Positions 1-23,000 of a DNA stretch of 64,000 bases are shown one piece after another. Numbering within the stretch: position 1 is the first letter of the stretch; every line of letters starts with the position of its first letter. A program made the translations under genes and the position numbers. The stretch is from Styela clava (taxonomy: Eukaryota), in the NCBI RefSeq assembly GCF_964204865.1, contig NC_135252.1:11160001-11224000 (forward strand). The letters run 5' to 3'. The notes beneath the pieces are model-generated. The model did not search any database and was not told where the DNA came from. It saw only the letters and a list, made by a program, of their open reading frames with translations.

Positions 1-226
1 TTTGAAACGAAGTAAAAACTCAAACCAGAAGTTTAAGTTGAATAGCCTTGGCCAAATAACAAGTTACAGCTAATTTAATTATTCAAGGAATTTTCCGTTT
101 AATGTATTAGTAGAAACATTGTCATGATCTTGAATAGTCGAACGATGAAACCAAGATGTATGTGCCAAGTGCCATAGTGCATATATGCATGATGTAATCA
201 ATTTACATAAAAATATATCATCATAC

Positions 227-842
227 TTATTAGGCAAAAAAACGGGCTTTCGATTATGAAGAACAACTTCTTCATATGTTCCATTGAAAGTTCCATTTGG
301 TACAGGTGCTTTTCTGTAATAAATTGCAATATAGTTAAGTATTGTTGGATACCACATACCAATAGTACATTTTAATATGCGACATGGCAGGCAGTAAGAT
401 AATAATTCTTGGATAGAATTAGGTCCCGTTACCAGTAGTTAAAAGAGAAAAGGGCGACTTTGGTCCTGTAAACACGAACACAACAACAACTTAAAAAAAT
501 TGTACTCATACTTTATGTTAGAAATAATGAAATTCAAAAAGAAAAATTTTTTTTCGATTTTGTAAAATATTTGATTGTTGGTAAGGAAGTAAAGAAATTA
601 ATAATACGTGACTACCCTTCTTTGATATATGTCTAATTGTCTACAACTTACTCAACATTTCGCTTGTCAGCCGGTTCGTTTGTTTTCTGTCTGTAAATGG
701 AATATTGTTGTGAGTTACTTGTTTGTTCGATGAAGGTAACATGATGTTTATTTTTTGTTTTACCTTATATAGAAAAAATAATATGCAATTCAGATGACAG
801 CAATTAAAACAAACACTCCTATGACCGCGCCGGCTATGGGAC
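227..842 (-). pseudogene. Partial duplicate (A') of the TM and proximal cytoplasmic exons of receptor A; premature TGA in the TM exon; probably continues beyond the window start
   Basis: Bases 1-864 closely match 3142-3999. Exons 842-764 (GPIAGAVIGVFVLIAVI*; TGA at 790-792 where A has GGA), 690-652 (RQKTNEPADKRNVE) and 313-227 (KAPVPNGTFNGTYEEVVLHNRKPVFLPN) all have AG/GT boundaries. Confidence 0.75.
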
Positions 843-3800
843 CTACAAATATAAAAAAAAAATCAACATGGTATATAAATCGACTGGCTTAGATTCCGTT
901 TGAACTTTAGTAGGTTGAACATTGGGTTTATAGAGTCTTAAAAGATAACAATTCTAGAATCACAATTAGGGTTTTGTTTTTTATCAATTCTAAAAAAAAC
1001 ATCGTGTTTTAAATCAAATATTTTCTGTATTATTTGTATTTTTTATTGAAATACCCCCTGCATCGCCGCGAAACTACGCCAAAACGTTGCATTCTGGCAG
1101 ATGCACACGCAGCCGGAATTATAATTTCAAAATATAAGTAAAATTTTATAATTTGACTTTCGCTTCTATTGCGTACATTTATCGCCATGCTTGTATCTCC
1201 ACCAAAGTCATAAGATTATACCCGGAATGTTTAGCCGAGATATCAGAGAGACGTTTTGAGTAAGAAAAATTATGAAAATTAGCTCACGAGCCCACTACAA
1301 AAGCAATTAGATCAAGTGCAGCCCTCCGGCAAAACGAGTGGGTTGCGATAATGAAGAATATGCTCATATCGGCGGTAATCTACTAATATAAACGACGAGA
1401 CACCCTAGCGGCTAGGGTCACCATATTTAAAAAAGCAAAATTCCGGACAGTGCATGCTATTTTCATGACCTCGTAGTAAAAAATATGCGCACGGTACGAA
1501 ATAACAATGTTCTGTATTATCAGATTCCGGACATTTGAGCGTTTTTTAAATTCTTTCCGGACGCAAAATTTGACCCTAAATTCTGGACGGTATGGCAACC
1601 CTACCCTAGCTTAGCCTATGCTAATTGTAGGAGTCCTCGGATGCAAAGACGCCACAACTAATCTGTTATGACGCCTAAATATGGATTTCGAGTTCATGTA
1701 TTGACATTTTCCTCATAAAATGAGGGCATTATTACGGCTAATACTGTCCGGTTAATTTATGCTTAGCATGCTTTGTTTTCAAGGTTAAAGTGATGGAGCT
1801 TTTCAAGGTTATACGAACTCATTTATTCGATCGCATTTTCGCGATTTCAATTTTGGCAAGATGGTTTCGTCGCAACAGGCTCGTTCAATTAATGGCTTAT
1901 CGGTTGCGTCTTACTGCGCCAACCACTGAACTACAGCTTGAGAAGGTGTACATAAGCCTCTATCGATATTTGTGGCGTTTTGAAAGATTTATTGCAAATA
2001 AGAAGCGCTTGGCAAGTTTTTACGTCCATTTTTCTTCAACCTATTTAATACAAAAAAATCAAATAGTACAGCCATTTTGAACAAAAAAGGCATAAAAAAC
2101 TTGATTTAAAACAATTGTTTTAAAACAATTCTTTTTGAACAAATCCCTAATCACAATGCTTTGCTCTAGAATGTATTATGAATATCCATTTAACCTATCA
2201 TATAGCCTTTAGGAATTTAAAAATATAACAGTGAATGATACTTTCAACACTAACGATAAAATGCGAGAGATGTACACAGTGTCACCAGATGTAATGTTTG
2301 CAAAATTTATAAAATTATGCAAATTCGAAGATAAAATATTTAAGGTTCCGTTTGTTGTTTTGTTTATCAAATTTTTTAAAACGTAATCCATCAAAAACAA
2401 TCATAACTTATACCGTTATCGGTCAGTAAATGCCTATATCTGAATTATTTATATATTGATGTTTGCCCACGCGTAGGATGCTTCTTTGTCCTCTGGTGAT
2501 GATAGTTCATCCGCTTCATCAGCTTGATTGTGAACGGGTTGTAAATTCAGCTGTTGGTAGTTTGAATCATCAGGTATTTTATTTTTGTCCAATTCCCTAA
2601 AATACAAACAAATACAGTTTAAGAATCGTCGTCCAACGTATCCTGGCGATCCCGAAACACGATGTTTCTCACTAAACGTGTTTACTGAAATTTGATTCAT
2701 CTTTAGTAGTTCTTTTCAAATATTTCTGTGAAATGGCTCTGACAATTTGTGTTTTGAATAAAAACCAACAACTAGATTATTTAAATTAAAATTATTATTT
2801 TCAATTGATTCGTCATATTCAAGCAAGAATATGTTTTGTAAAATTGTTGCTTTATCTTGATAAACTGGCTAAAACAATTAATTTAGTAAAAGCAAATTTT
2901 GTGCCTAACCAAATTAGTTGTTAAATTACTATAATGGCCATATTTTGGTAGACGTTAGCTCACGCATAAAACATATCTTCGCCCTTTGACTGTTCATTGT
3001 CAACAGAAAATCCAGCAACGTCTTCAGCAGGCAAGAAACCATCATCATCAATTATTGCGTATTCGCTTCAGAATAAAAATAATCTGTTTTGTAAACCATA
3101 TTTGTATGTTCTTCTCCATTTGAGATATTGGTTAAGTGTTATTTGAAACGAAGTAAAAACTCAAACCAGAAGTTTGAGTTACCTTGGCCAAATAACAAGC
3201 TACAGCTAATTTAATTATTTAAGGAATTTTCCGTTTAACGTATTAGTAGAAACATTAAAATTGTCATGATTTTGAATAGTCGAACGATGAAACCAAGATG
3301 TATGTGCCAAGTGCCATAGTGCATATATGCATGATGTAATCAATTTACATAAAAATATATAATCGTACTTATTAGGCAAAATAACGGGCTTTCGATTATC
3401 AAGAACAACTTCTTCATATGTTCCATTGAAAGTTCCATTTGGTACAGGTGCTTTTCTGTAATAAATTGCAATGTTCAGTATTGTTGGATACCACATACCA
3501 ATAATACATTTTAATATGCGACATGGCAGGCAGTAAGATGAGAATTCTTGGATATAATTAGGTCCCGTTACCAGTGGTTAAAAGAGAAAAGGGCGACTTT
3601 TTGTCCCGTAAACACGAACACAACAACAACTTATGAAAATTGTACTCATACTTTATGTTAGAAATAATGAAATTCAAAATGAATTTTTTTTTTCGATTTT
3701 GTATAATATTCAATTGTTGGTAATGAAGTAAAGATAATTAATAATACGTGACTACCCTTCTTTGATATACGTCAAATTGTCTACAACTTACTCAACTTTT

Positions 3801-6800
3801 CGCTTTTCAGCCGGTTCATTTGTTTTCTGTCTGTAAATGAAATATTGTTGTGAGTTACTTGTTAGTTCGAGGAAGGTATCATGATGTTTGTTTTTTGTTT
3901 TACCTTTTATAGAAAAAATAAAATGCAATTCCGATGACAGCAAGTAAAACAAACACTCCTACGACTGCGCCGGCTATGGGACCTACAAATATAAAAATCG
4001 GTAAAATATATCAAAGTACTATATTTTAATCAGTATTATTTATCGTTCAGGAGGACCAAAAATGAACAATAAAAGGTATGAAAATAGAATGGAAACAGTA
4101 GCGTCTATTTTAAAATATTTTTTTTTACATCTGCAAGTCTTGTAACCAAGTTTATAAAATGAAGCATTTGAGTTTTTATGAATATGGAATTACATTTGTC
4201 TGAAGACATATAATAAATACCAACTATTGATAAAAAGAATTCTGATAAAATTGGTTTGCTCTGTTAGTTTTCAGAATATCGTTTCGCAGAACTATAGTTC
4301 CACAGAAAGACACACTGTTTTCGTTTATAAGAGTTAGCATTTACTTGATTGTACTTGTATACCTGAATGACTGACTCCTACTGTGGCTTTTTCATTACCT
4401 ATTTGCTATCCGCACAGAGAGAAACAACGTTGTTTAAAAATGTCATCATATAGGTCTCGATTACAAATTCTTGTTTACAAGTTGATGTAGTAAAAATGTA
4501 TATTCATATTCAAATTACAACCATCTCGATCATGATTCATTCACTACTATTGCGCATTATTTTTGTTTTGTTCATTAGCTCTGCGTACTTGTATCCATGT
4601 GCATGCATGATATACCCGTTTGATAGTTACCGGCATTGCTGGGTGAATTTTCCTTTGTTGGTGATATTGACTGCGTTATTTCGCTCAAATTCGGCTTATC
4701 GTTGGTTGCTGTAACAACAACATAATATTGAAACGATTGTTATGTCCACTACGTGTCCAAACAGACATAAAATAAAAATGGGACCATTGATACTAAAGAT
4801 CAGCATTTTCCAAACTTTTTTGGCCACGGAATACTTACGCTTTTTATCTCGCCTCGCGGAACACCAAAAATGAAAAGGTAAAATTGATAAAGAAAAATGG
4901 TGTATTGCAGCGGTCCCAAAAAGTGCGCTACTACAGTACTGTTGCCAAATGCGCCGCGAAAACTAACAAAAGTGTATTCAACATACCTAAAATATGATTG
5001 AATATTTGTGTATGTATGTCTGAAGAAGTCTGACCTTTGTCAGACGAAACGTTACAGGAAGATATTTGTGTTAGTGTGTAGCAAGACTCTTGAATCACTT
5101 AGGATTGTTATCTCTACTCTTGCTACAGCATCCTTGCAATATATGTCTACGGATCCACCGGCACAAAAGAATAGAAGAAGGATAAGTAGTTAGTCTCGCA
5201 GAAACCAAATAATCAGCGGATATTTTGCATATTGCATTCAAATGTTTATTGCTCCTTACTTTAAATGCTGTGTATCTGGATCAATAAATTCATTTTAACT
5301 TTCTTTGTCGTTTACTTTCTATTACGTAGTACGTAATACGTAGTACGTACTAGTACTTTGTTCAATTTTGCGAGCTGGAGTTTGTTTATCTGCTGAATCG
5401 AGTTTAGCGAACATGAGTGATTTTTTCATCATTTTCAAGTAAAATCAGGTAGAGCTTGAGAAAGAAGAGTTGACCTTTTGCATTTGTCCGCTTTAGGCCG
5501 ACCGTGACGCGATATTGAACGGTCGCTAGTTGTGCGACAACTTCACGATCCCGAGATAGCCATGGCGACCAATTTGGTTGTAATTTTGGTCCATTTGGAA
5601 GATGCTCGGGGAACACTAGTGTTACGCGGAACACAGTTTGGGAAACGCTGCTATAGATTATAGAAGGTAAATAGTAGATTATAAAATTAGTGAATGATTG
5701 GCTTCTGGCTATGAAACTAGCAACTGTATCTAACATATTTAAGACAGTGCGTAAACTTGAAATCTTTTAATAAATGGGTGGAATTTATATAAGTGCTAAC
5801 ACTTTTAACATTTAAATTAATACCTGCGTTTACTGTCGTCTCGGATATTGTTATTGGTATTGACGATGTCATTGATTCATCTATGTTAGCTGTTATAGAT
5901 ATTGTTCCCGTTTTCTCTACAATTTGTTGAACAGTACAATTCGGTGAAAAAAAAATATCCGTTCGCATTTAATATGATACAAAAAATAAAAATGTCAGAC
6001 GTCAAGGCATTTTGTATTTGCTTTTGTCAAATAACAATTTATAGTCCTTGTTCGTGGAATTATATTTCTGTCATAAAATATATCAGAAAAAAAAGATAAT
6101 AGGTTTTATCACTATTATTTTCCACGTATTTAGTTTTGCATTCTCAGTATAAATTATGAGTATTTAATAAAGTTATATGTAAAATTATGAAACATGCGTA
6201 ATATGTGATAAGCATGAAGATCTTGTGACCAAATATACATTTATATGCTATTTTATATACAGAACTATACCAAATATTATCAAAAAAGCCATTAACGTTA
6301 TCACTGATGACAAGTGCGATAGCCAAGGTAAGTGGGCTATTGAAACAATTATTATATTAAATTGAATTTCTGGTCGAATTCTGTTACCTGTAGTCGGCGG
6401 AGAACTTTCTTTAGTTGTTTCAACAGGTATTGTCGTTGTTTCTCGTGTTGTACTTCCATCTGTTGTGTACAGTATGTGTTTTATATTAATTTACACTTAT
6501 AAATTTGATGGGTTCAATATGGAGTCCGAATAAAATTATTCAGTTTCTTAATTTGATTCATCAAATAAGAATACATTTTTATGCAAATTCATTCTGAGTT
6601 TCGCCCCTGCTTTAGATGAATTCAATACACACCAAAGTTATTATTATATAGATATTCAGAGTTTTATGATAATTTCATCAATTTAATATTAATTTTGGAT
6701 GAGTACTGTGTTTCCCCGAAAATAAGACCTACCTGAAAATAGGACCTAGCATGAATTTTAAAAATATTTTTAATATAAGCCTCCCCTTAAAATAAGAGAC

Positions 6801-7884: not shown

Positions 7885-8785
7885 AATACAAATCTTTTTA
7901 TCTAGTTATTGTATTTTGCAATAATATATTATATTTTTACTAGTCAACATGGTTACATCGCATCTTAATCATACATTACCTCCTGAAAATGATAATTGTA
8001 AATATTTGAATACCGACCTCGTTCATTTATATTGTAATTAAATGTCTTAGCGTTTGCTTTGATCATGAATGAATACTCTAGTCTAGTCCAACATACACCA
8101 ACCTAGATGCTCTTTGTTATTTGAAGATATTCGATGGAAATTTAAAAAAAAATGGAAAAAAATATATATATATATTCGATGGCCTACATTAATTTGTGTG
8201 TTGATTTCACGAGCGTGCTGGCGATTCATCGCTGATATAAAATACAACAGTTTATTGTTTATTTCAATACCATTGCTTCACAAAAGTTGCCTGAGGAAAA
8301 AATATACACCCTTTCCGAACCGAATAGTCAAATATCACAAATTATTGTCCAGTTTAAAATTTCACAATAGAAGTGTTACAGCGTCCCATAGTCAGTTGAA
8401 CACACTAAAATCAATGTGCTATTCAGCTGTCACAAACTTGCATAAAGGTTACAGTGAAGCGAAATGATCTGGAGACAATTTTTATTAGATCTACTCAACC
8501 ACAAATGATGACAATCCCAAACAGAATTCTAATCAGAATCATATCGACACCCAGGCATTTGTGCGAACTTATTAGACTATCCTTCATATAACAACTTGAG
8601 GGAAATCTTTCCACTGAATTTGTGTAACTTTCTTATGAGGACCTTCATGTACCCTTCTCTTCGCACCTTTATGTAATAAAACTAAGTTATTTGTATATTG
8701 TCAGATGGAGCAAAACCAGCCCCTGGAAAAAACATCATCGAACAATTTCTCTATCAGCGCATGATTGCCACCAGGTATATTCATG

Positions 8786-9010
8786 TCGATGATAAATAAA
8801 GCACAGCCGGTGTATAGCAAAACGATGTAATTTACCGACGTTTCGTATTTCTATTCAGAATAACTTCATCAAGACATGATATGAAAGCACACTAACGTAT
8901 ATATAGAGAGAGAAAAGCAAGAAGAAAGAAAAAATTATCACGTCAAATTCGAAACGTCCGCAAATTACATCGTTTTGCTACACACCGGCTGTGCTTTATT
9001 TATCATCGAC
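8786..9010. repeat. ~65-bp-arm inverted repeat (foldback), possibly Penelope-like retroelement derived
   Basis: GTCGATGATAAATAAAGCACAGCCGGTGT..GCAAAACGATGTAATTT..GACGTTTCG and its reverse complement at ~8945-9010. Confidence 0.7.
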
Positions 9011-9379
9011 AATTTCTCTATTGTTGTATATGTTTCATTTAATGGGGAACAACTGCAACGTTTTGACTCCAACATTCCTCCACCATAACCATACGTGTTT
9101 TCATTTATTTATTCGAATAAAGACATCATAGTAAGCTAAAAGGTATATTAGGTGGAAGGCGAAGTTATATTGTGGCATAATATACAATCAATCAAGTTCA
9201 AACATTGTATCTTACTAGTATGATTCATAGCAATGTTCTTGAAATGTTGAAAATATCAAACAATAATATAAAAAAATATTAAACAGTTCTGTATAATATA
9301 TAGTATTTAATCTTCAAAATATTGTAGAAATCCATGTAAGATTTACAGTTTTCTTCATCTTGGCATACACAGTAGGTTT

Positions 9380-12300
9380 TCACTCGTCATTCTCAACGAA
9401 ACTATTAATGTCTCCACTTTTCTTTGATTTGTTTACCCTGGTGAAATGTTGATAAGATATCAGATAATTCATTTTAAGTATCTGTAGATTTTTTATAATA
9501 CCATTCTGAATATATAGGGATATTTGACTTGGCACCGAAGTGCCGATAAATATCAGATATTTATTATTCACTTCAAATCAGTATTTGTATTGAAGTTCAC
9601 TATCGTTCAGACGTTAATTTTCAAATGCTAAAAGTGTAGCAGTGTATAAAAATCTCTGAAAGTGACATTCCGCGATCACAGCAAAGAAAGCGATACTATT
9701 GACTATACATGTCTGGTTCGGCTCAAGATGACCATGTTATAATATGTCTATAATATAGATATCAATTTAATACTTACATGGTATATAAACCGACTGGCTT
9801 AGATTCCGTTTGAACTTCAGTAGGTTGAACATCGGGTTTATAAAGTCTTAAAAGAAAACAATTCCATTTTTTATCAAATATTTAGAATTTGCCAAACACT
9901 ATGCCCATGTATTTCCTTATATATATAAAGATCAGTGGTATTACAAACGATGTTTTTTGTGAAATTGATGAATACAGAGATAATGGATCATCTGTTTCCT
10001 CTTTCCCTGTTACCTTCTCGAGTAAGCGTTACAATAGGTTGACCTACTGGCAGAATTGTCTGAACAGACTTCCTGGCGGTGTCATGTACAGGTTATCAAG
10101 CTCTATATGCGGAAATTTCATGACGTAGTACGTACTACGCGTTGGTTGGTAGTTCAACGCAAATTGTGTTAAATATATGCAATTATTGCATCGTATGATA
10201 CAAGTACTAAAGCCTATATTCGTGCCTTGCAACTGATAAAAGTTTCTGTCCGCTCACAACGATTGAAAAATTAACAAGATACTCTGGCTGTCCATTTGTT
10301 ATGAAATGAAGACGGTTGAACTATATGTTGTGTACTTCAGGGTTTAGAAACTCGTTTATTTATTTTCTGTTATCACCTGTTATAAAGTACTTCGTCATCC
10401 GGATTTTCTGGCTCAGCTTGCGTATGAACGGATTGTAGATTCAACTGTTGATACTCTGTATCGTCGACGTTACTATTTTGATTCAATACTCTAAAACATA
10501 TTTAGGTTATGGGTTCGAAATAAAAATGAGTGTAGAATTTTAATTCTGAAAGCCAATGTTTTGCTTTTAAATGTGTTATGAAAATTCATTTACCTTATAC
10601 TATAACCTTCAAGAATCTGATAATATAATAAGTTATGAAGCAGAAGTAATTAGCCCTAATGATAAAGTATGAGAGACACACACAGTCTTACCGGCTATAA
10701 TATTGGCAAATTATATACAATTGTGCAATTGCAAAGATAAAATATTTAGGTTCCGTTTGTTGTTTTATTTATCACATTTTTTAAAAACACAACCTATCAA
10801 AAGCAATGTTTAAATAAACCGTTATCAATCAGTAATTGCCTATATCTGAATTATTTATATATAGATGTTTGCCCACGCGTATGATGCTTCTTTGTCCTCT
10901 GGTGATGATGGTTCATCCGCTTCATCAGCTTGATTGTGAACGGGTTGTAAATTCAGCTGTTGGTAGTTTGAATCATCAGGTATTTTATTTTTGTCCAATT
11001 CCCTAAAATGCAAATAAATACAGTTCAGGAAGTGTCCAAAGTATCCTGGCGATCCCGAAACACGATGTTTCTCACTAAACTTGTTTATGAAAATTGGATT
11101 CAACTTTAGTAGTTCTTTTCAAATATTTGTGTGCAATGGCTCCGAACAGTTTATGTTTTGAATGAAAACCACCAATTAGTTTATTTAAATTAAAATTATT
11201 CTTCAAATTATTATTTAAATAGATTAGTCATATTCAAGCAAGAATATGTTTCGTGAAATTGCGTTTGGGCAAAATTCCTATAAAACCGCACGGAAGTGAA
11301 ATTAAAATATGCATCACTGTTTTAGTGCTTCATCTCGATATACTGGCTAAAAACAATTGAGTAAAAGCAATTTTTTTGTACATAACCAAATCAGTTGGTA
11401 AATTACTATAATGGTCATATTTTGGTAGACGTTAGCTCACGCATAGAACATATCCTCGTCCTTTGACTGTTCATTGTCAACAGAAAATCCAGCAACGTCT
11501 CCAGCAGGCACGTAACCATTATCATCAATTGAGGCATATTCGCTTTAGAATAAAAATAATTTATGTTTGTAAAATCATATTTGTATGCTATATTTAAAGT
11601 ATTTATGAATCGCTATTTGAAACGAAGTAAAAACTCAAACCAGAAGTTTAGGTGGAATTACGTCGGCCAAATAAGTTAGGCTAATTTAATTATAGGAATT
11701 TGTCGTTTGATGTACTATATTATTGAAAACGATGAAACCAAAACGTATATGCCAATACTATATTATATACTAACCAAAAAGACCTAATTTGAATTATTCA
11801 CAGAAATATATATCATCATACTTGTTGGTCAACACAACGGGCCTTCGATTATCAAGAACAACTTCCTCATATGGGTCATTGAAATTTCCATTCGGTACAG
11901 GTGCTTTTCTGTAAACATTAACAATAAAAATAAATTAGAATTAGGAATTCCAGCACTCTATAACAATACATTCTCAATATCCATTAGGACAGAGTTTAGA
12001 ACACAAATACACAAATATATGGACAAGAAGTTTTGTGTATAGGCTACAACCTAGTAAACAGTGATTAAAAAAGCCGACTTAGGAAAACGGAACATAGCAT
12101 TCCTTCAAATTTAAATAGAGATATTCATTTTGATTTTGTAAAATATTTGATTACTGGTTATGAAGTAAAGATAATTAATAGTATGCTACTACCATTCTTT
12201 AATATATGTCACTTGTCAACAACTTACTCGACATGTCGCTTGTCAGCCGGTTTGTTTGTTTTCTGCCTGCAAATGAAATATTGTTGTAAATTACTTGTTA

Positions 12301-14726
12301 TTTTGTGGATTGTATCGTGATCTTTATTTTTTTTTTACCTTTTATAGAAAAAATAAAATACTATTCCGATGACAGCAATTAAAACAAACACTCCAACGAC
12401 TGCGCCGGCTATGGGACCTACAAATAAAAATAAAAATAAAATCGTTAAATATATGGTAGTAATGATTTTAATCGGTATTATTTATCGTTCAGAAGGACCA
12501 AAATGAATAAAAAAGTTTCCATTCAAAAATATTGCTTTCTACACATGCATGCTTTGAGTCTCATGATCACGTTTATAAAGTGAATTATCTGAGTTTTTAT
12601 GAATACGCAATTACATTTTTCTAAAGTCACATCATAAACAACAACTACTATTAGAAAGAATTGTTGTAAAATTGGATTGCACTATTAGTTTTTGAAATAC
12701 CATTTGCAGACTTATACAAAAATACGCATTGTTTGCCAATATAAGGGTCAGCTATGTATTCTCAACTTTAGCATTTTCATTACATATTTGCTATCTACTC
12801 AGAAAGAAACAACGTTGTTTAAAAATTTCATCATATAGGTCTCGATTCCAAATTCTTGTTCAAAAGGTGATGTAGTAAAAATGTATATTCATATTCAAAT
12901 TACAACCATCTCAATCATGATTCATTCACTGCTATTGCACAACATTTTTCTATTAACTCTACATATTTGTATACATGTACATGCATGATATTCTTGTTTA
13001 CTAATTACCGGCATTATTGGGTGAATTTCCCATAGTTGATGGTATTGTCTGCGTTGTTTTGCCCAGATCGTTGGTTGCTGTGGAAATTCATGAACTGTAA
13101 ATTGGCTCATTATATAAATAAAAATGAAAAATAAAAAAATGGAACCTTTGATACTATAGAAAGTAAATTCTAGATTATGAAATTAGTAAATAATTGTGGC
13201 TTATAGATGCATGTTGTGAAACTAGCAATTGTATCTGACATGTTTATGACACTGCGTAAACTTCACAAAATGGATATGTTTTTGCTAACACTTCTCACAT
13301 TTAAATTAATACCTTCGTTTACTGTCGTCCCAGATGTTGTTATTGGTATTGACCATTTACTTGTTTCATATGTGTTAGTTGTTATAGATATTGTTCCCGT
13401 TTTATCTACAATTTATTGAACATTGGAAATGTATTGATTCAGTGGAAAAATTATTTGTTTGCATTTAATATGGTACAAAAAATAAAAATATCAAACGTCA
13501 AGGCATTTCGTGTTTGCTTTTGTCAAATAACATTTTATAGTCCCGACTCCTGGTTTGTGGAATTATATTTCTGTCATAGAATATATATATCAGTAAAAAA
13601 GATATTAAATTATATCACTATTAATTTGCAAATAATTAATTTTATATTGTCTATATAAATCATATGTGTTCATACCGCTGGTGTGTTCTGTTGACGGAGA
13701 AGATGTTGGATTACACTCCGGTACCGTTGATGTACTGGGTGTACTTGATGAAGCTGTTTGTTTGAATATAAAAAGAAGTTGTTAAAGAAAGGTTCTCGAT
13801 AAAATAGTCATGTAAAATATAGCGTTTGACCTGGCTATGTTAGCGTAGTATGTTGAAAATTTCAGCTGAAACCCTATCCCTATCACCTATCGTGGGGTAT
13901 AATAAAATAGGTAGGCAAGGCACAAGCGAGATACTTTCTTCAATTCTTTTTGAAAAGTGGCACTTTAAGTATCAGTGACATTCAGGAATTTGTTCGGAAA
14001 GAAAATGTGAAAACGTATCATGACAAGATATTATAGGCTTTAGATTCCCTTAATTATTATTTCTGTTTTTAATTTTTACAATCTTACGTTTAAATATAAG
14101 TTTCAATTGCCTAATCTAAGTCATTTGATGGTTTTCGAGCTCTGAGATAAAAATAAAAAAAATCCTAATATTCAATCAAAGTACAAAATATGTTAAATTA
14201 ACTGAGAATTAGACATAAATTGTTTGTTTTGATGAAACGTGATTTTCATATTTAAAGAATTCACACCAGACTTACCTATTACGCATACTAGTAAATCTCT
14301 CTCTCCATAGTTTGAAGATGTATTGACTTTACATGAATATTCACCGGAATCTGTCAATGCTACATGCTTAGGAAAATATATTCCCCCGTTGGTTTGATAA
14401 ACAGAACAGGACTGACTTTTGCTAACTTCGACATTATCTTTCCACCAACTTATTGATGATGTTGATGAGGAATATGAACACCTTATGGAATTGGAATTTG
14501 TATCGAAGTTGTCGGTATCCAATTTGAAATAGTCGGTATTCGGATTAAAAGTAATATCTGTTATAAGATAAAACGAATGTTGTTGATCACTATAGCACAG
14601 AAGACACATAGGTCAAAATATTTGCAACTTACCGCCACTGATATCATCTGAATATATTTCCGAAAACAAATGAAAACCAATTAATAAGATGATTATGTTC
14701 AATGAATTATTGGCGTACTTCAACAT
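9380..14726 (-). CDS. Receptor B: signal peptide - single Ig domain - Ser/Thr stalk - TM - long tail with ITIM/ITSM-like tyrosine motifs (~429 aa, 13 exons)
   Basis: Exons 14726-14633 (signal); 14557-14276 (Ig: C..SWWK..DSGEYSC); 13753-13676, 13405-13313, 13077-13009 (stalk); 12417-12339 (TM GPIAGAVVGVFVLIAVIGIVFYFFYKR); 12266-12228, 11908-11822, 11542-11441, 11002-10877, 10490-10377, 9846-9778, 9437-9380 (tail). All introns are GT-AG and the 1290 nt are in frame. Motifs: DPYEEV, NEYASI, MFYAEL, SNYQQL, ASYAVL, TEYQQL, VLYNRL, GLYTMV. Confidence 0.85.
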
Positions 14727-15813
14727 TTGTTTGTCGCTTGTTCACTCGTCCTTCGCTATTCTTCACCTTGTATACATTCTATGCTTCATTTGAATATTAT
14801 CACCAAAACATCTAGATTTGATCACTATTAAAAGATTGAGATGCAAAATCAGATCAGATATTAAAAAAGCATTGTCAATTTTAATAAAATTATGATCTGA
14901 ATTCTGAACATGCGCACACTAAATATTGAACGAAAAACTTTTTTGTTTTATCGGCTCATCCTGAAAATTACTAAATCAGCTATGCCAAACCAAAAATCTG
15001 AATCACTTAGTGCAATTAATCGGATGCCAATCATATTCCAGCACTCTTGCCTCCGTCTGTTATTAACAAACTTTATATTCTGCACAGCTAATGGACATTT
15101 GATCTATATTTACCTACACGAAGATTAACTTTACCCATCCAACTAATAACATTTATTTTACAAATACATCTATTGCAAGGCATAGGCAGAGTGCATTTTT
15201 ATCTAATTTGGCTCCAAGTAAGTATTCAATGATTCATTAAGAAACTATCTTTAGTTTTAGACCATTTAAGAATCAAACGCTAAAATAACACAAACAAGCT
15301 AAATAAACTGTGTGAATGTGGTATGCTGCAATTAAAATAGCAAACGTTTACTGGCATTTTCAATACCTCCTTTTTTCGTTTATAGTGAAAGTGCAAATAA
15401 TTCACTGATCTTAATATTCAAATCCCATTCTACACGATTTGTTATTGCTTGATTCAGGCTAAAACTGAATATTTAACCGATGCCAAACTTCATTCATTAC
15501 TATATAAATAAAAGCACTCAAGTAGTTTCTGTACATCGAATTTCACTAAACTCGAATTAAAATTCTGTTGGCGCCTTTTTGGTATGCTTTTAATTTCATG
15601 AAAACATTCTCATAGAATTCAGTTCCCAGCCCTAACCTAATCTAAAAAATCACTGAGATCACACAACCGCTGAGATCGTCCCACTAAACCATTCTGTTTA
15701 TCACAACCTGTAATGCATTTTTTTAATCCTATAATAAGGTACTTTTTGGATCGGACTAAAACATTACATATAGTCTAACCTTAATTAATACCATTGCTTG
15801 GCAAACAAATTTA

Positions 15814-20014: not shown

Positions 20015-23000
20015 CTAAGCGTTTTCATACTCATAAATAATTTTCTCCTGGTTTTTGTTCAAGCTGCGAAAACATAAACGTAACATAGTAAAGAACGGTT
20101 TCGAAACAACCAAATTAATTGATCTTTTTTCTTACTTTTCATAATACGGTGGCCGTTCGGAGATATTTGGATTGTGTGTAATATATGCACTAGGTTCATA
20201 CCCGTCTTCTTCGATGACATTTGAATATGTTCTAGAATGATTTTGGTTGAAAATTAGTTCACTATAAAATTATATTTGACGTCAAATGTTTTTGATAATG
20301 TAGAAGATATCTTATTCAGACACCTGCAAGATATCTTATTCAGACATCTTGTTTGCTTGTTATGATTTAGTCTAGAAAATTATTGTGTTTATCAAACTGC
20401 AGTTCGCGAAAATGCCGTTTGAGTGTGCATCCACGATTGAGATACATGTTTTCAAGTGGTTTAGATTTTGTTCCTAAAAATAATTAATGTATAAATTTTA
20501 CCTATTGCCCTCTGAGGTATTATTGGACGCAGTTGGTGGATTAGACGAAATCTCGTGATAATGTAGGGATTCCTCAAGCACAACATCCGATTCAGGAACA
20601 TTTTTCGGTGATCTATATTGAAATTAAATAATTAGATTCAAAATTGAACTGACTTTAGCATTATTATTTTGTATAAACTACACGCCTTATTAACAGTTTC
20701 AGTGTGATTAACTAAACTAAACAGCGATTGAAAGAACATTTCGATTTTTTGTTCTAACATCATCAAAATTCAGAAATAAAAGATACATACTCTTAACATT
20801 GTATCTCTGGAGTAAAATTATATAACATTTGTTTTTGCTATTGTAACTTATTTGATTGCTGGCAATGAATTAAAAATAAACAACTGTTTGTTGCTATTAT
20901 CTTTCATGCCTAATCATCAATAACTAACTCACACGACGTTCCGTTCCGTGGGTTCGTTTGTTTTCCTTCATGACAATAAAATATTATTGTGAAATAAAAG
21001 TTACTTACAGAAATGTACCGTGATCTAAATTTTTTGTTTTACCTTTTATGGAAATAAAATACAATTCCGATGATGGCAATCAACACCACTACTCCTACGG
21101 CTGCGCCTGCTATGAGGCCTGCAGATATAAAAGTATATTGAATATTTGAAGAACAATATTTTAAATGGTATTACTTACCAAGCAGAAAGCAGCGGTATCA
21201 AACATTTAAAGCACGACATGTTAATATCACGAATGGTCACAAAAATTGCTGAAAACATCGCCCTTGGTTATTGTGCGATTCTTTTACAACCATCTCGGCC
21301 GAGGTGATTTTCTAACATTCAATATTATTTCACACCATTTTTTATCAGCTCCACATACATGAACATATATGCATATACACACATTCGGTAATTACCGGTA
21401 TTGTTGGGTAAATTTTCTGTTGTTGATTTTATTTTCTGCGTTGTTTCGCTCAGATTCGTCTTGCTTGTTTCTGTGGAAAATAAAAATCTCTGATTGTCTA
21501 AATATATATATATATATACGACGAATGGAAAATGGGACCATCGATTAATTAAAAATGCTTCTCGAATGCCTGTTTTGTATTATTTTTACAATTTTACCCT
21601 TGGAAGAAACCAAATAACATCGACCTAAATGCAGTATATTATTTTAATTTTAAATTGTTATGAATATATTCACCAAGAAGTGAGAACGGCGAGTCTTAGT
21701 TTATCACTTATCGATCTCGATAAGTATGTTGATAGGTATTTGTCTGTCTGTTTGTTTGTCTGTTAGATGCACGCGATATCTCACAAAAGCAAAGTTGGAT
21801 CTACTCCAAATTTTGCATGTGCATTCATCATATCCCGGACCAGAAGTCTATTGATTTTGGAAGATTTATGTCATATAATTAGCAGTTATTCATTAATTAG
21901 TGATGGAACACACGATGTCGCTAAGGAGTGAGAGTGGATTAATCGAAACTGCAGTTTCTGTTTTGGGGGATCCCCTAACTTTCGATCGATAAGTTTTCGG
22001 TCTCCGACCGATATTCTCGTTTTATAATTGGCTCATTAATGATTACTGCAAAACTTGGAATTGTACTCGTACAAGTTTTTCCAACGCGTAGACAAGGGCT
22101 CTTCAACCTGGAGGTCTCGACCGATCGGGGGGCCACAAAAGGAATCAATGGGAGTCGCGGTGATATATTTGTTGCACTAACTCATGTTGAAAAAAAATTT
22201 CCATCAAGTTTTAAAGATTTGTAACCTGTACTGAGAGGCACCAAGACATGATTAGATTTTTTGTGCGAAAATAAATAAGCAAGCCTGTCTCATCAAAAGC
22301 ATTGTCAGTTTTTTCAATATTTTCTGTATTATTAAATTTCACTTCATTTTTAACTTTGTTCCTGGCGGTCGCGAAAAATTTGGCCGCGCCGAGTGGATCG
22401 TGATGAAAAAAGTTTGAAAACACTGGCTTAGACAAAAATCTCTTTTAACAATCGGTTGATATTTATGTCCTGACAGACACAATTGGAATTCGAATACATA
22501 CCTGCATTCACTGTCGTTATGGTTATTGACGATCTTGTCGTTTCATTCACGTCTTTGAAAGGAGTAGATGTTGGATTACAAGCTGGGACCGTGGATGAAG
22601 ACGGTGTACTTGCTGAAGCTGTATGTTTGCATGCAAGAAAACAATTCAATTCGCTAAAGAATATTCTCAGGTCAATAGTTAGTATTGGAATATGGCGTTG
22701 GACTTGGCCATGTAGGCGTCGTATGTTTACGGGTCGAAATCCAATCCACCTCATCAGAATATGATAAATAGGGTAGACAATACGGATCCGAAAAGCTTCC
22801 AACCTTTCTTAAAATGCTGCTCTTTGCATATCAGTGACGCCTAACCAGATAGAATGGATTAAAATATTAACATAACATTATATTAAATATATCGATAAGA
22901 AGATAAAATTAGACACCTGCTATTAGTTCAATGAAATTAGAGCAAAAACTATATATATATATATATATATAGATGATTAGTTAACCGGAAGAACTCATAT

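What the first reader, a model, noticed from the sequence alone, without database searches (positions are those of the whole stretch)
9380..12266. Tyrosine motifs assembled across splice junctions from symmetric phase-2 tail cassettes
Seen: every internal tail exon in B is phase 2-2 and a multiple of 3 (39, 87, 102, 126, 114, 69 nt). Four consecutive exons end just after a Tyr and the next exon supplies the +3 hydrophobic residue: MFYA|EL, ASYA|VL, VLYNR|L, GLYTM|V. Gene C shows the same (PYYEN|L). Inference: skipping, duplicating or losing any cassette keeps the frame but rewrites the junction motif. For example FYA|EL would become FYA|VL, and SYA|VL becomes SYA|LY in gene A, destroying the YxxL. 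This could be a splice-programmable combinatorial signalling tail.
Basis: partly seen in the sequence, partly recalled or inferred. Interest (0 to 1): 0.85.

Follow-up and report, generated by a model that had tools for sequence, protein, structure and literature searches.

The report
Sea-squirt receptor tail with intron-split tyrosine motifs
The exon pattern is real: a Styela clava receptor gene builds its tail from seven in-frame mini-exons whose junctions cut through tyrosine docking motifs, but this is the known split-exon design of vertebrate ITAM genes, copied here by exon duplication, and no tail splice variants are on record.

Summary
Gene B is Styela clava LOC120341785, on the minus strand. 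Its tail exons are 39, 87, 102, 126, 114 and 69 nt plus a terminal exon, all behind phase-2 GT-AG introns. RefSeq isoform X1 is reproduced from the window by one exon chain with exactly these boundaries. Four junctions cut a YxxΦ motif (FY[A]EL, SY[A]VL, LYN[R]L, LYT[M]V).

Classical vertebrate ITAMs are always split in the first tyrosine module, though by phase-0 introns. Exons t4 and t5 are tandem duplicates, so the four junctions are not independent (P about 0.001, 0.008-0.056 after collapsing).

The cassettes have been reshuffled in evolution. Examples are the t4/t5 duplication, a transposon-linked loss of t5 in gene A, and an intragenic duplication in gene A.

Regulated splicing of the tail has no support. 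The two annotated isoforms differ only in an extracellular stalk exon. RNA reads could not be examined.

The scan had already followed up the adjacent duplicate tail (s1-809855). This is a new variant of a known kind, of modest interest.

The parts
14633..14726 (-). Gene B exon 1: start codon and signal peptide (phase 0 to 1)
   Evidence: Unique GT-AG chain reproducing P0007
14276..14557 (-). Gene B Ig-like domain exon (phase 1-1)
   Evidence: Pfam Ig_2, I-set and ig hits are below threshold, but the C...W...DSGxYxC signature is present
13676..13753 (-). Gene B Ser/Thr-rich stalk exon (phase 1-1)
13313..13405 (-). Gene B 93-nt stalk cassette; the only difference between RefSeq isoforms X1 and X2
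13009..13077 (-). Gene B stalk exon (phase 1-1)
12339..12417 (-). Gene B transmembrane exon, 79 nt; switches phase from 1 to 2; no charged residue in the membrane span
12228..12266 (-). Tail cassette t1, 39 nt, phase 2-2 (basic juxtamembrane stretch)
11822..11908 (-). Tail cassette t2, 87 nt, phase 2-2; YEEV inside the exon
11441..11542 (-). Tail cassette t3, 102 nt, phase 2-2; YASI and YVPA inside; ends with the Tyr of FY[A]|EL, the first half of ITAM-like pair 1
10877..11002 (-). Tail cassette t4, 126 nt, phase 2-2; supplies EL, then SNYQQL 10 residues on; ends with the Tyr of SY[A]|VL; the most conserved cassette
10377..10490 (-). Tail cassette t5, 114 nt, phase 2-2; tandem duplicate of t4; supplies VL, then TEYQQL; ends LYN[R]|L
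9778..9846 (-). Tail cassette t6, 69 nt, phase 2-2; LYKPD at the start; ends LYT[M]|V
9380..9437 (-). Terminal tail exon t7, including the TGA stop
2471..3982 (-). Gene A (LOC144421113): TM exon (3904-3982) and cassettes t1 (3792-3830), t2 (3369-3455), t3 (2964-3065), t4 (2471-2596), with the same boundaries and junction residues as gene B. The RefSeq model reads through the t4 donor to a stop at 2449
957..2148 (.). High-copy interspersed repeat that replaces the stretch holding t5 in gene A's first tail copy
868..936 (-). Gene A t6 copy; its donor is degraded to GTTGAT at the duplication junction
1..842 (-). Second tail set of gene A: dead TM exon with an in-frame TGA (764-842), t1' (652-690), t2' (227-313). 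t3' to t7' lie before the window start (locus L005)
20015..21118 (-). Gene C (LOC144420837): TM exon (21043-21118) and phase-2 cassettes of 33 nt (20933-20965), 111 nt (20502-20612) and 96 nt (20136-20231), plus a possible last exon (20015-20063). RefSeq omits the 33-nt cassette and ends at YYEK* on the donor of the 96-nt exon

Best explanation
Gene B encodes a lineage-specific type I receptor of Styela clava: signal peptide, one divergent Ig-like domain, a mucin-like stalk, one membrane span and a disordered tail of about 197 residues. The tail is made of short exons that all sit behind phase-2 introns. The phase is set by the TM exon, which changes phase from 1 to 2. Its core is two ITAM-like pairs, ExxY[A]|EL-x10-YQQL and ExxY[A]|VL-x10-YQQL. 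Each has its first YxxL cut by an intron, the same layout as every classical vertebrate ITAM gene and, in repeated form, as the TCR zeta chain. The junction-straddling motifs are best read as a by-product of serial exon duplication. A unit that begins with the +2/+3 residues of one YxxL and ends with the Tyr of the next automatically recreates YxxL at each new junction and inherits the phase. The symmetric phase makes the tail modular over evolutionary time. In the mature mRNA the tail is most likely spliced constitutively. By inference, once phosphorylated the tyrosines dock SH2 proteins: a Syk-type kinase on the pairs, and SHP-, Src- or Grb2-type proteins on SNYQQL, VLYNRL and YEEV. Exon structure, phases, duplication history and conservation are shown here. 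Phosphorylation, binding partners and signalling direction are inferred.
For: Exon chain and phases: with RefSeq X1 reproduced exactly. Organism and gene identity. t4 and t5 are duplicates (z = 11.8) whose terminal tyrosines align with a one-codon offset. All YxxPhi tyrosines and +3 residues are conserved in four tail copies, while 19 of 177 other positions differ between alleles. dN/dS is 0.3-0.46, and t4 is the most constrained cassette. Paralogs differ by whole cassettes: t5 was lost with a transposon and gene A carries an intragenic TM-to-t6 duplication. The t4-type cassette occurs only in this cluster. Both annotated isoforms carry the full tail. [quoted passage not shown] The split is characteristic, by phase-0 introns (PMC2110893, PMC2832619 and PMC5112662).
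Against: No RNA reads were seen, so constitutive splicing rests only on two RefSeq models. Homology of t3, t6, t7 and gene C's last exon to the t4/t5 unit is not detectable (z below 2.5), so serial duplication beyond t4/t5 is inferred. Spacing is 10 residues, not 6-8, and the intron phase is 2, not 0, so the ITAM parallel may be only an analogy. Another S. clava receptor carries a canonical ITAM wholly inside one exon. The donors of t4 (GTGGGC) and t5 (GTGATA) are as weak as the donor of the known alternative stalk exon (GTATTA).
Confidence: 0.6

Rival explanations
1. One reading: the phase-2 cassettes are skipped in regulated combinations, so each isoform carries a different set of junction motifs and the tail is programmed by splicing.
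For: All cassettes are symmetric, so every combination stays in frame. The t4 and t5 donors are weak. The gene does use cassette splicing in its stalk. The RefSeq model of gene C omits a 33-nt phase-2 cassette. PECAM-1 shows that such regulation exists in vertebrates (PMC2132561).
Against: Both annotated isoforms of gene B have the same complete tail, as does the older model from another assembly. The protein searches found no other variant. The best consensus motifs (SNYQQL, TEYQQL, YEEV) lie inside exons and would be removed, not rewritten, by skipping.
Confidence: 0.17
2. Coincidence: a Tyr-rich tail cut by many introns will sometimes have junctions next to tyrosines, and the pattern has no historical or functional meaning.
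For: Eight of ten tail tyrosines are YxxPhi, so 16 of 198 residues are eligible. With only two independent junctions P is 0.056. The pattern was defined after seeing it. A control S. clava tail has no such split.
Against: P is about 0.001 as observed and 0.008 with one duplicate collapsed. The same split recurs at the homologous t3-type exon of the divergent paralog C. Seven consecutive phase-2 introns are themselves unlikely without shared history.
Confidence: 0.13
3. Deep homology: the split half-ITAM exon is inherited from the common ancestor of tunicates and vertebrates, with the intron displaced by one nucleotide.
For: The intron lies inside the first YxxL, with an acidic residue at -3, as in classical ITAMs. 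Repeated exons each carry the second half of one motif and the first Tyr of the next.
Against: The phase is 2, not 0. Spacing is 10, not 6-8. No sequence similarity to vertebrate ITAM chains was found. The TM has no acidic residue. A canonical ITAM in the same genome is unsplit. The cassette is restricted to one local cluster.
Confidence: 0.1

Closest known systems
Classical vertebrate ITAM genes (TCR zeta/CD247, FcR gamma, DAP12, CD3, CD79; Xenopus laevis FcR gamma with an extra ITAM exon)
   Same: [quoted passage not shown] There is an acidic residue at -3. Motif number is increased by adding an exon (PMC4536121). From memory, the repeated exons of the zeta chain each carry the end of one ITAM and the start of the next.
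   Different: The intron phase is 0 in vertebrates and 2 here (PMC2110893, PMC2832619). Spacing is 7 (6-8) there and 10 here. Those proteins are small adaptor chains with an acidic TM residue, whereas this is a receptor with its own Ig-like and mucin ectodomain and an uncharged TM. No sequence homology was detected.
CEACAM3 and CEACAM1-related ITAM tails (four short cytoplasmic exons)
   Same: An Ig-superfamily receptor carries its own ITAM-like tail, encoded by several very short exons, with the YxxL split by an intron. Paired A/B/C-like paralogs have different tails. Read-through at a lost or weak donor truncates some members (PMC2110893).
   Different: The split is at phase 0. CEACAM long and short isoforms arise from a frame-shifting 53-nt exon, not from symmetric cassettes.
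PECAM-1/CD31 cytoplasmic domain (exons 9-16)
   Same: The tail is built of many short exons with tyrosines spread over several of them. Alternative splicing of tail exons changes function (PMC2132561).
   Different: PECAM-1 isoforms are documented by cDNA, and none is documented here. The PECAM-1 motifs are ITIMs within exons, not junction-assembled motifs.
Other Styela clava receptor tails with ITAMs (control locus L006, G000:C3:18054400-18058600)
   Same: Same genome; a single-pass receptor with a Tyr-rich tail.
   Different: The canonical YETI-x6-YEDI lies wholly in one terminal exon behind a phase-1 intron, so the split and the phase-2 design are specific to the A/B/C family.

Membership tests
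Classical ITAM | Sequence D/E/NxxYxxL/I-x7(6-8)-YxxL/I | tested here: not met
   Both pairs have D/E at -3 and two YxxL, but the spacer is 10 residues (EDMFYAEL-x10-YQQL and KEASYAVL-x10-YQQL). They are ITAM-like only.
Classical ITAM | [quoted passage not shown] | tested here: met
   The introns t3|t4 and t4|t5 fall in the codon after the Tyr.
Classical ITAM | The splitting intron is phase 0 (PMC2110893, PMC2832619, PMC5112662) | tested here: not met
   All tail introns are phase 2.
Classical ITAM signalling subunits | Acidic residue in the TM segment for pairing with a ligand-binding chain | tested here: not met
   The TM span (PIAGAVVGVFVLIAVIGIVFYFFY) has no charged residue, and the protein has its own ectodomain.
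Classical ITAM | The doubly phosphorylated motif binds the tandem SH2 domains of a Syk-family kinase | not testable with these tools
   Needs phosphopeptide binding assays.
ITIM / ITSM | (I/L/V/S)xYxx(L/V) for ITIM; TxYxx(V/I) for ITSM | tested here: met
   SNYQQL and VLYNRL fit the ITIM pattern. TEYQQL is only ITSM-like, with L at +3. Gene C has LHYHEI and TYSNV. This is a pattern match only; SHP binding is untested.
Alternatively spliced multi-exon tyrosine tail (PECAM-1 type) | Tail encoded by several short exons with tyrosines on different exons | tested here: met
   Seven tail exons, with tyrosines on five of them.
Alternatively spliced multi-exon tyrosine tail (PECAM-1 type) | Documented mRNA isoforms that differ in tail exons | tested here: inconclusive
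   RefSeq X1, X2 and the older model all carry the full tail. RNA reads could not be obtained.
Immunoglobulin superfamily | Ig domain recognised by a profile above its threshold | tested here: inconclusive
   Ig_2 scores 22.4 bits (cut-off 27) and I-set 19.9 (cut-off 23.7). The Cys...Trp...DSGxYxC signature and a phase 1-1 exon are present.

The most novel reading that the evidence does not exclude
The phase-2 half-motif cassettes are a tunicate counterpart of the vertebrate two-exon ITAM module. Either it is an ancestral split exon whose intron moved by one base, or it is an independently evolved design that lets receptors multiply and swap ITAM halves by exon duplication. In addition, some cassettes (t4 and t5, which have weak donors) may be skipped or retained in haemocytes to change the number of ITAM-like pairs.
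Probability: 0.12. Interest if true: 0.6.

Novelty: new variant of a known kind. Interest (0 to 1): 0.3.

Why it matters
The origin of ITAM signalling modules before vertebrates is unresolved, and the split first YxxL is used as a signature of common descent among vertebrate ITAM exons. A tunicate receptor family with the same split, but in another phase and with a longer spacer, is a useful comparison for deciding whether that signature reflects ancestry or a repeatable way of building motif arrays by exon duplication. It also shows tail remodelling by cassette duplication, transposon-linked cassette loss and intragenic duplication within one locus. It does not show a new splicing-based signalling code.

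Tried and rejected
2. t4 cassette against 1.84 billion proteins: only the S. clava models, plus P0003. P0003 is a 1116-aa protein with a repeated NYNDVP..LRNVHNQ unit at 39% identity. It has no membrane-receptor layout, and I rejected it as unrelated.
3. Full-length search with the public model P0001: only S. clava genes A, B and C, plus a weak Ig hit to Xenopus myomesin. No homolog in another species was found, so conservation of junction positions across species could not be tested.
4. Genome-wide search for t4-type cassettes: hits only in this cluster.
5. Pairwise tests of t2, t3, t6, t7 and gene C's exons against t4/t5: nothing above z = 2.5 except t3 versus C's 96-nt exon, so older duplications remain unproven.
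6. Rfam, tandem-repeat and ORF scans of 8500-15000 found nothing else on either strand.
7. No typed or joined spliced model was sent to any search tool. Exons were sent by reference, and full-length searches used public protein ids returned by the tools. Exons were joined only inside local scripts: to read the junction peptides and to check the translation against the RefSeq model.

Full report
WHAT IS THERE

The window is G000:C3:11160001-11224000 of a 377-Mb genome. Public names on the matching proteins identify it as the ascidian Styela clava.

The finding lies in gene B, LOC120341785, on the minus strand. RefSeq isoform X1 (XP_077967305.1, P0007, 429 aa) is reproduced from the window by one unique GT-AG exon chain:
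- a signal-peptide exon (14726-14633);
- one Ig-like exon (14557-14276);
- three Ser/Thr-rich stalk exons;
- a TM exon (12417-12339);
- seven tail exons.

Ectodomain exons are phase 1-1, the 79-nt TM exon switches phase from 1 to 2, and every tail intron is phase 2. The Ig domain is divergent. Its Pfam Ig hits are below threshold, but the Cys...Trp...DSGxYxC signature is present.

CHECK OF THE OBSERVATION

Exon lengths are 39, 87, 102, 126, 114 and 69 nt, all symmetric phase 2. Four consecutive junctions read FY[A]|EL, SY[A]|VL, LYN[R]|L and LYT[M]|V, where the bracketed residue is the split codon.

Placing seven phase-2 junctions at random in this tail puts four or more inside a YxxPhi motif with P about 0.001. 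The four are not independent, however. t4 and t5 are clear tandem duplicates (z = 11.8), and their terminal tyrosines align with a one-codon offset. So the t4|t5 junction was created by the duplication itself, from the donor side and the acceptor side of one ancestral exon. Collapsing duplicates gives P = 0.008 (3 of 6) or 0.056 (2 of 5). The pattern is real and more than chance, but modestly so.

Six further tyrosines lie inside exons: YEEV, YASI, YVPA, YQQL twice and YKPD. The best consensus matches are among them: SNYQQL (ITIM pattern), TEYQQL (ITSM-like) and YEEV.

The two junction motifs YA|EL and YA|VL each sit 10 residues before an in-exon YQQL and have an acidic residue at -3. They are therefore the first halves of two ITAM-like pairs.

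[quoted passage not shown] They also report that Xenopus laevis FcR gamma gained a second ITAM through an extra exon with the same split (PMC4536121). Kammerer, Zimmermann and colleagues call the split of the YxxL by a phase-0 intron typical or characteristic (PMC2110893, PMC2832619, PMC5112662).

A tyrosine motif assembled across a splice junction is thus a textbook property of ITAM genes, not a new device. The Styela version differs in three ways:
- intron phase 2 rather than 0;
- a 10-residue spacer rather than 6-8;
- location on a receptor with its own ectodomain and an uncharged TM, not on an adaptor chain with an acidic TM residue.

From memory, the usual vertebrate position is Yx|xL, which would put the Styela intron one nucleotude... 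one nucleotide upstream of it. I could not verify that detail in text.

PARALOGS AND HISTORY

Gene A (LOC144421113) keeps identical boundaries, phases and junction residues for t1 to t4 and t6, but lacks t5. The roughly 0.7-kb stretch that holds t5 in the sister copy is replaced by 1.2 kb of a high-copy interspersed repeat with inverted ends.

Gene A also carries an intragenic tandem duplication. It runs from about 15 nt before the TM exon to 2 nt after t6, and the two copies are 93-94% identical, introns included. The second copy begins with a TM exon killed by an in-frame TGA and continues with a full t1' to t7' set that runs off the window start.

All YxxPhi tyrosines and their +3 residues are conserved in gene B, in its allele from the older assembly (P0001), and in both gene A sets. 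Only the non-YxxPhi tyrosine of GYVPA is lost. dN/dS is 0.3-0.46. t4 is the most constrained cassette, and t5' in the spare set looks relaxed.

Gene C (LOC144420837) also has an all-phase-2 tail. Its 96-nt exon is weakly homologous to t3 (z = 2.5) and ends YYE[N]|L if spliced.

The t4-type cassette occurs nowhere else in the genome, and no homolog was found in another species.

INDEPENDENT CONTROL

There a canonical YETI-x6-YEDI ITAM lies wholly inside one terminal exon behind a phase-1 intron. The split, phase-2 design is therefore a property of this family, not of the genome.

THE SPLICING HYPOTHESIS

The logic is sound: every cassette combination is in frame. PECAM-1 shows that multi-exon tyrosine tails can be regulated by splicing (PMC2132561). 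But no evidence for it was found here:
- RefSeq lists two isoforms of gene B, and they differ only by the 93-nt stalk exon 13405-13313. Their tails are identical and complete.
- The older model from another assembly has the same tail architecture.
- The RefSeq model of gene A does not join t4 to t6. It reads through the weak t4 donor (GTGGGC) to a stop seven codons later.
- The RefSeq model of gene C ends YYEK*, because the donor of its 96-nt exon overlaps a stop codon. That model also omits the 33-nt cassette.

These are gene models, not reads. Weak donors on t4 and t5, as weak as that of the known alternative stalk exon, leave some room for the idea.

VERDICT

The best reading (0.6) is a constitutively spliced, lineage-specific receptor tail. 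Its ITAM-like pairs were built by exon duplication of half-motif units, which by construction places introns inside YxxL. This parallels the vertebrate ITAM exon design and makes the tail easy to remodel in evolution. Function (tyrosine phosphorylation and SH2 docking, activating or inhibitory) is inferred from motif patterns only.

The earlier scan report on the adjacent duplicate tail (s1-809855) reached a similar description of the ITAM-like motifs and the dead TM exon, and I re-verified those points here. Exons went by reference, and full-length searches used public protein ids.

Noticed in passing
window 13313-13405 (-): A 93-nt phase 1-1 Ser/Thr-rich stalk exon is the only difference between RefSeq isoforms X1 (429 aa) and X2 (398 aa) of gene B. 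The annotated alternative splicing of this gene is therefore extracellular.
   Followed up: yes
window 1-3997 (-) and L005: Gene A carries an intragenic tandem duplication of the TM-to-t6 segment (93-94% identity, introns included). The junction lies 2 nt after t6, the second TM exon has an in-frame TGA, and a full spare set t1' to t7' follows in the same phase.
   Followed up: yes
window 957-2148: A high-copy interspersed repeat (912 first-look candidates on many contigs, about 1 kb, inverted termini) replaces the stretch that held cassette t5 in gene A's first tail copy.
   Followed up: partly
window 10877-11002 versus 2471-2596: Cassette t4 is 98.4% identical between genes A and B, while the flanking introns are about 83% identical and the other cassettes 84-94%. 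This points to strong constraint or a short gene-conversion tract.
   Followed up: partly
P0001 (XP_039266280.1) versus window gene B: The older RefSeq model has gene B's ectodomain, but its t2 cassette is identical in protein to gene A's t2, and 19 other tail residues differ. This suggests allelic variation or gene conversion between A and B.
   Followed up: no
window 20133-20138 and 20933-20965 (-): In gene C the donor of the 96-nt exon overlaps a stop codon (AAG|TAA), so the unspliced and spliced forms end differently (YYEK* versus YYENL...). The RefSeq model also leaves out the 33-nt t1-like cassette, whose acceptor tract is degraded.
   Followed up: partly
window 10856-10876 and 2449-2470 (-): Read-through of the weak t4 donor (GTGGGC) is closed after seven codons in both A and B (WANINI* and WANIYI*). 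RefSeq uses this ending for gene A.
   Followed up: partly
L006 (G000:C3:18054400-18058600), minus strand 2032-2177: An unrelated S. clava single-pass receptor has a canonical ITAM (YETI-x6-YEDI), plus YEIA and YEDI, in one terminal exon behind a phase-1 intron.
   Followed up: partly
P0003 (1116 aa, public protein of unknown source): It carries about a dozen tandem units of an NYNDVPDLNLRNVHNQSDRAGQTTG-like repeat that weakly match the YQQLNLQPVHNQ core of t4 (E = 8e-7, 39% identity). This is probably chance or compositional.
   Followed up: no
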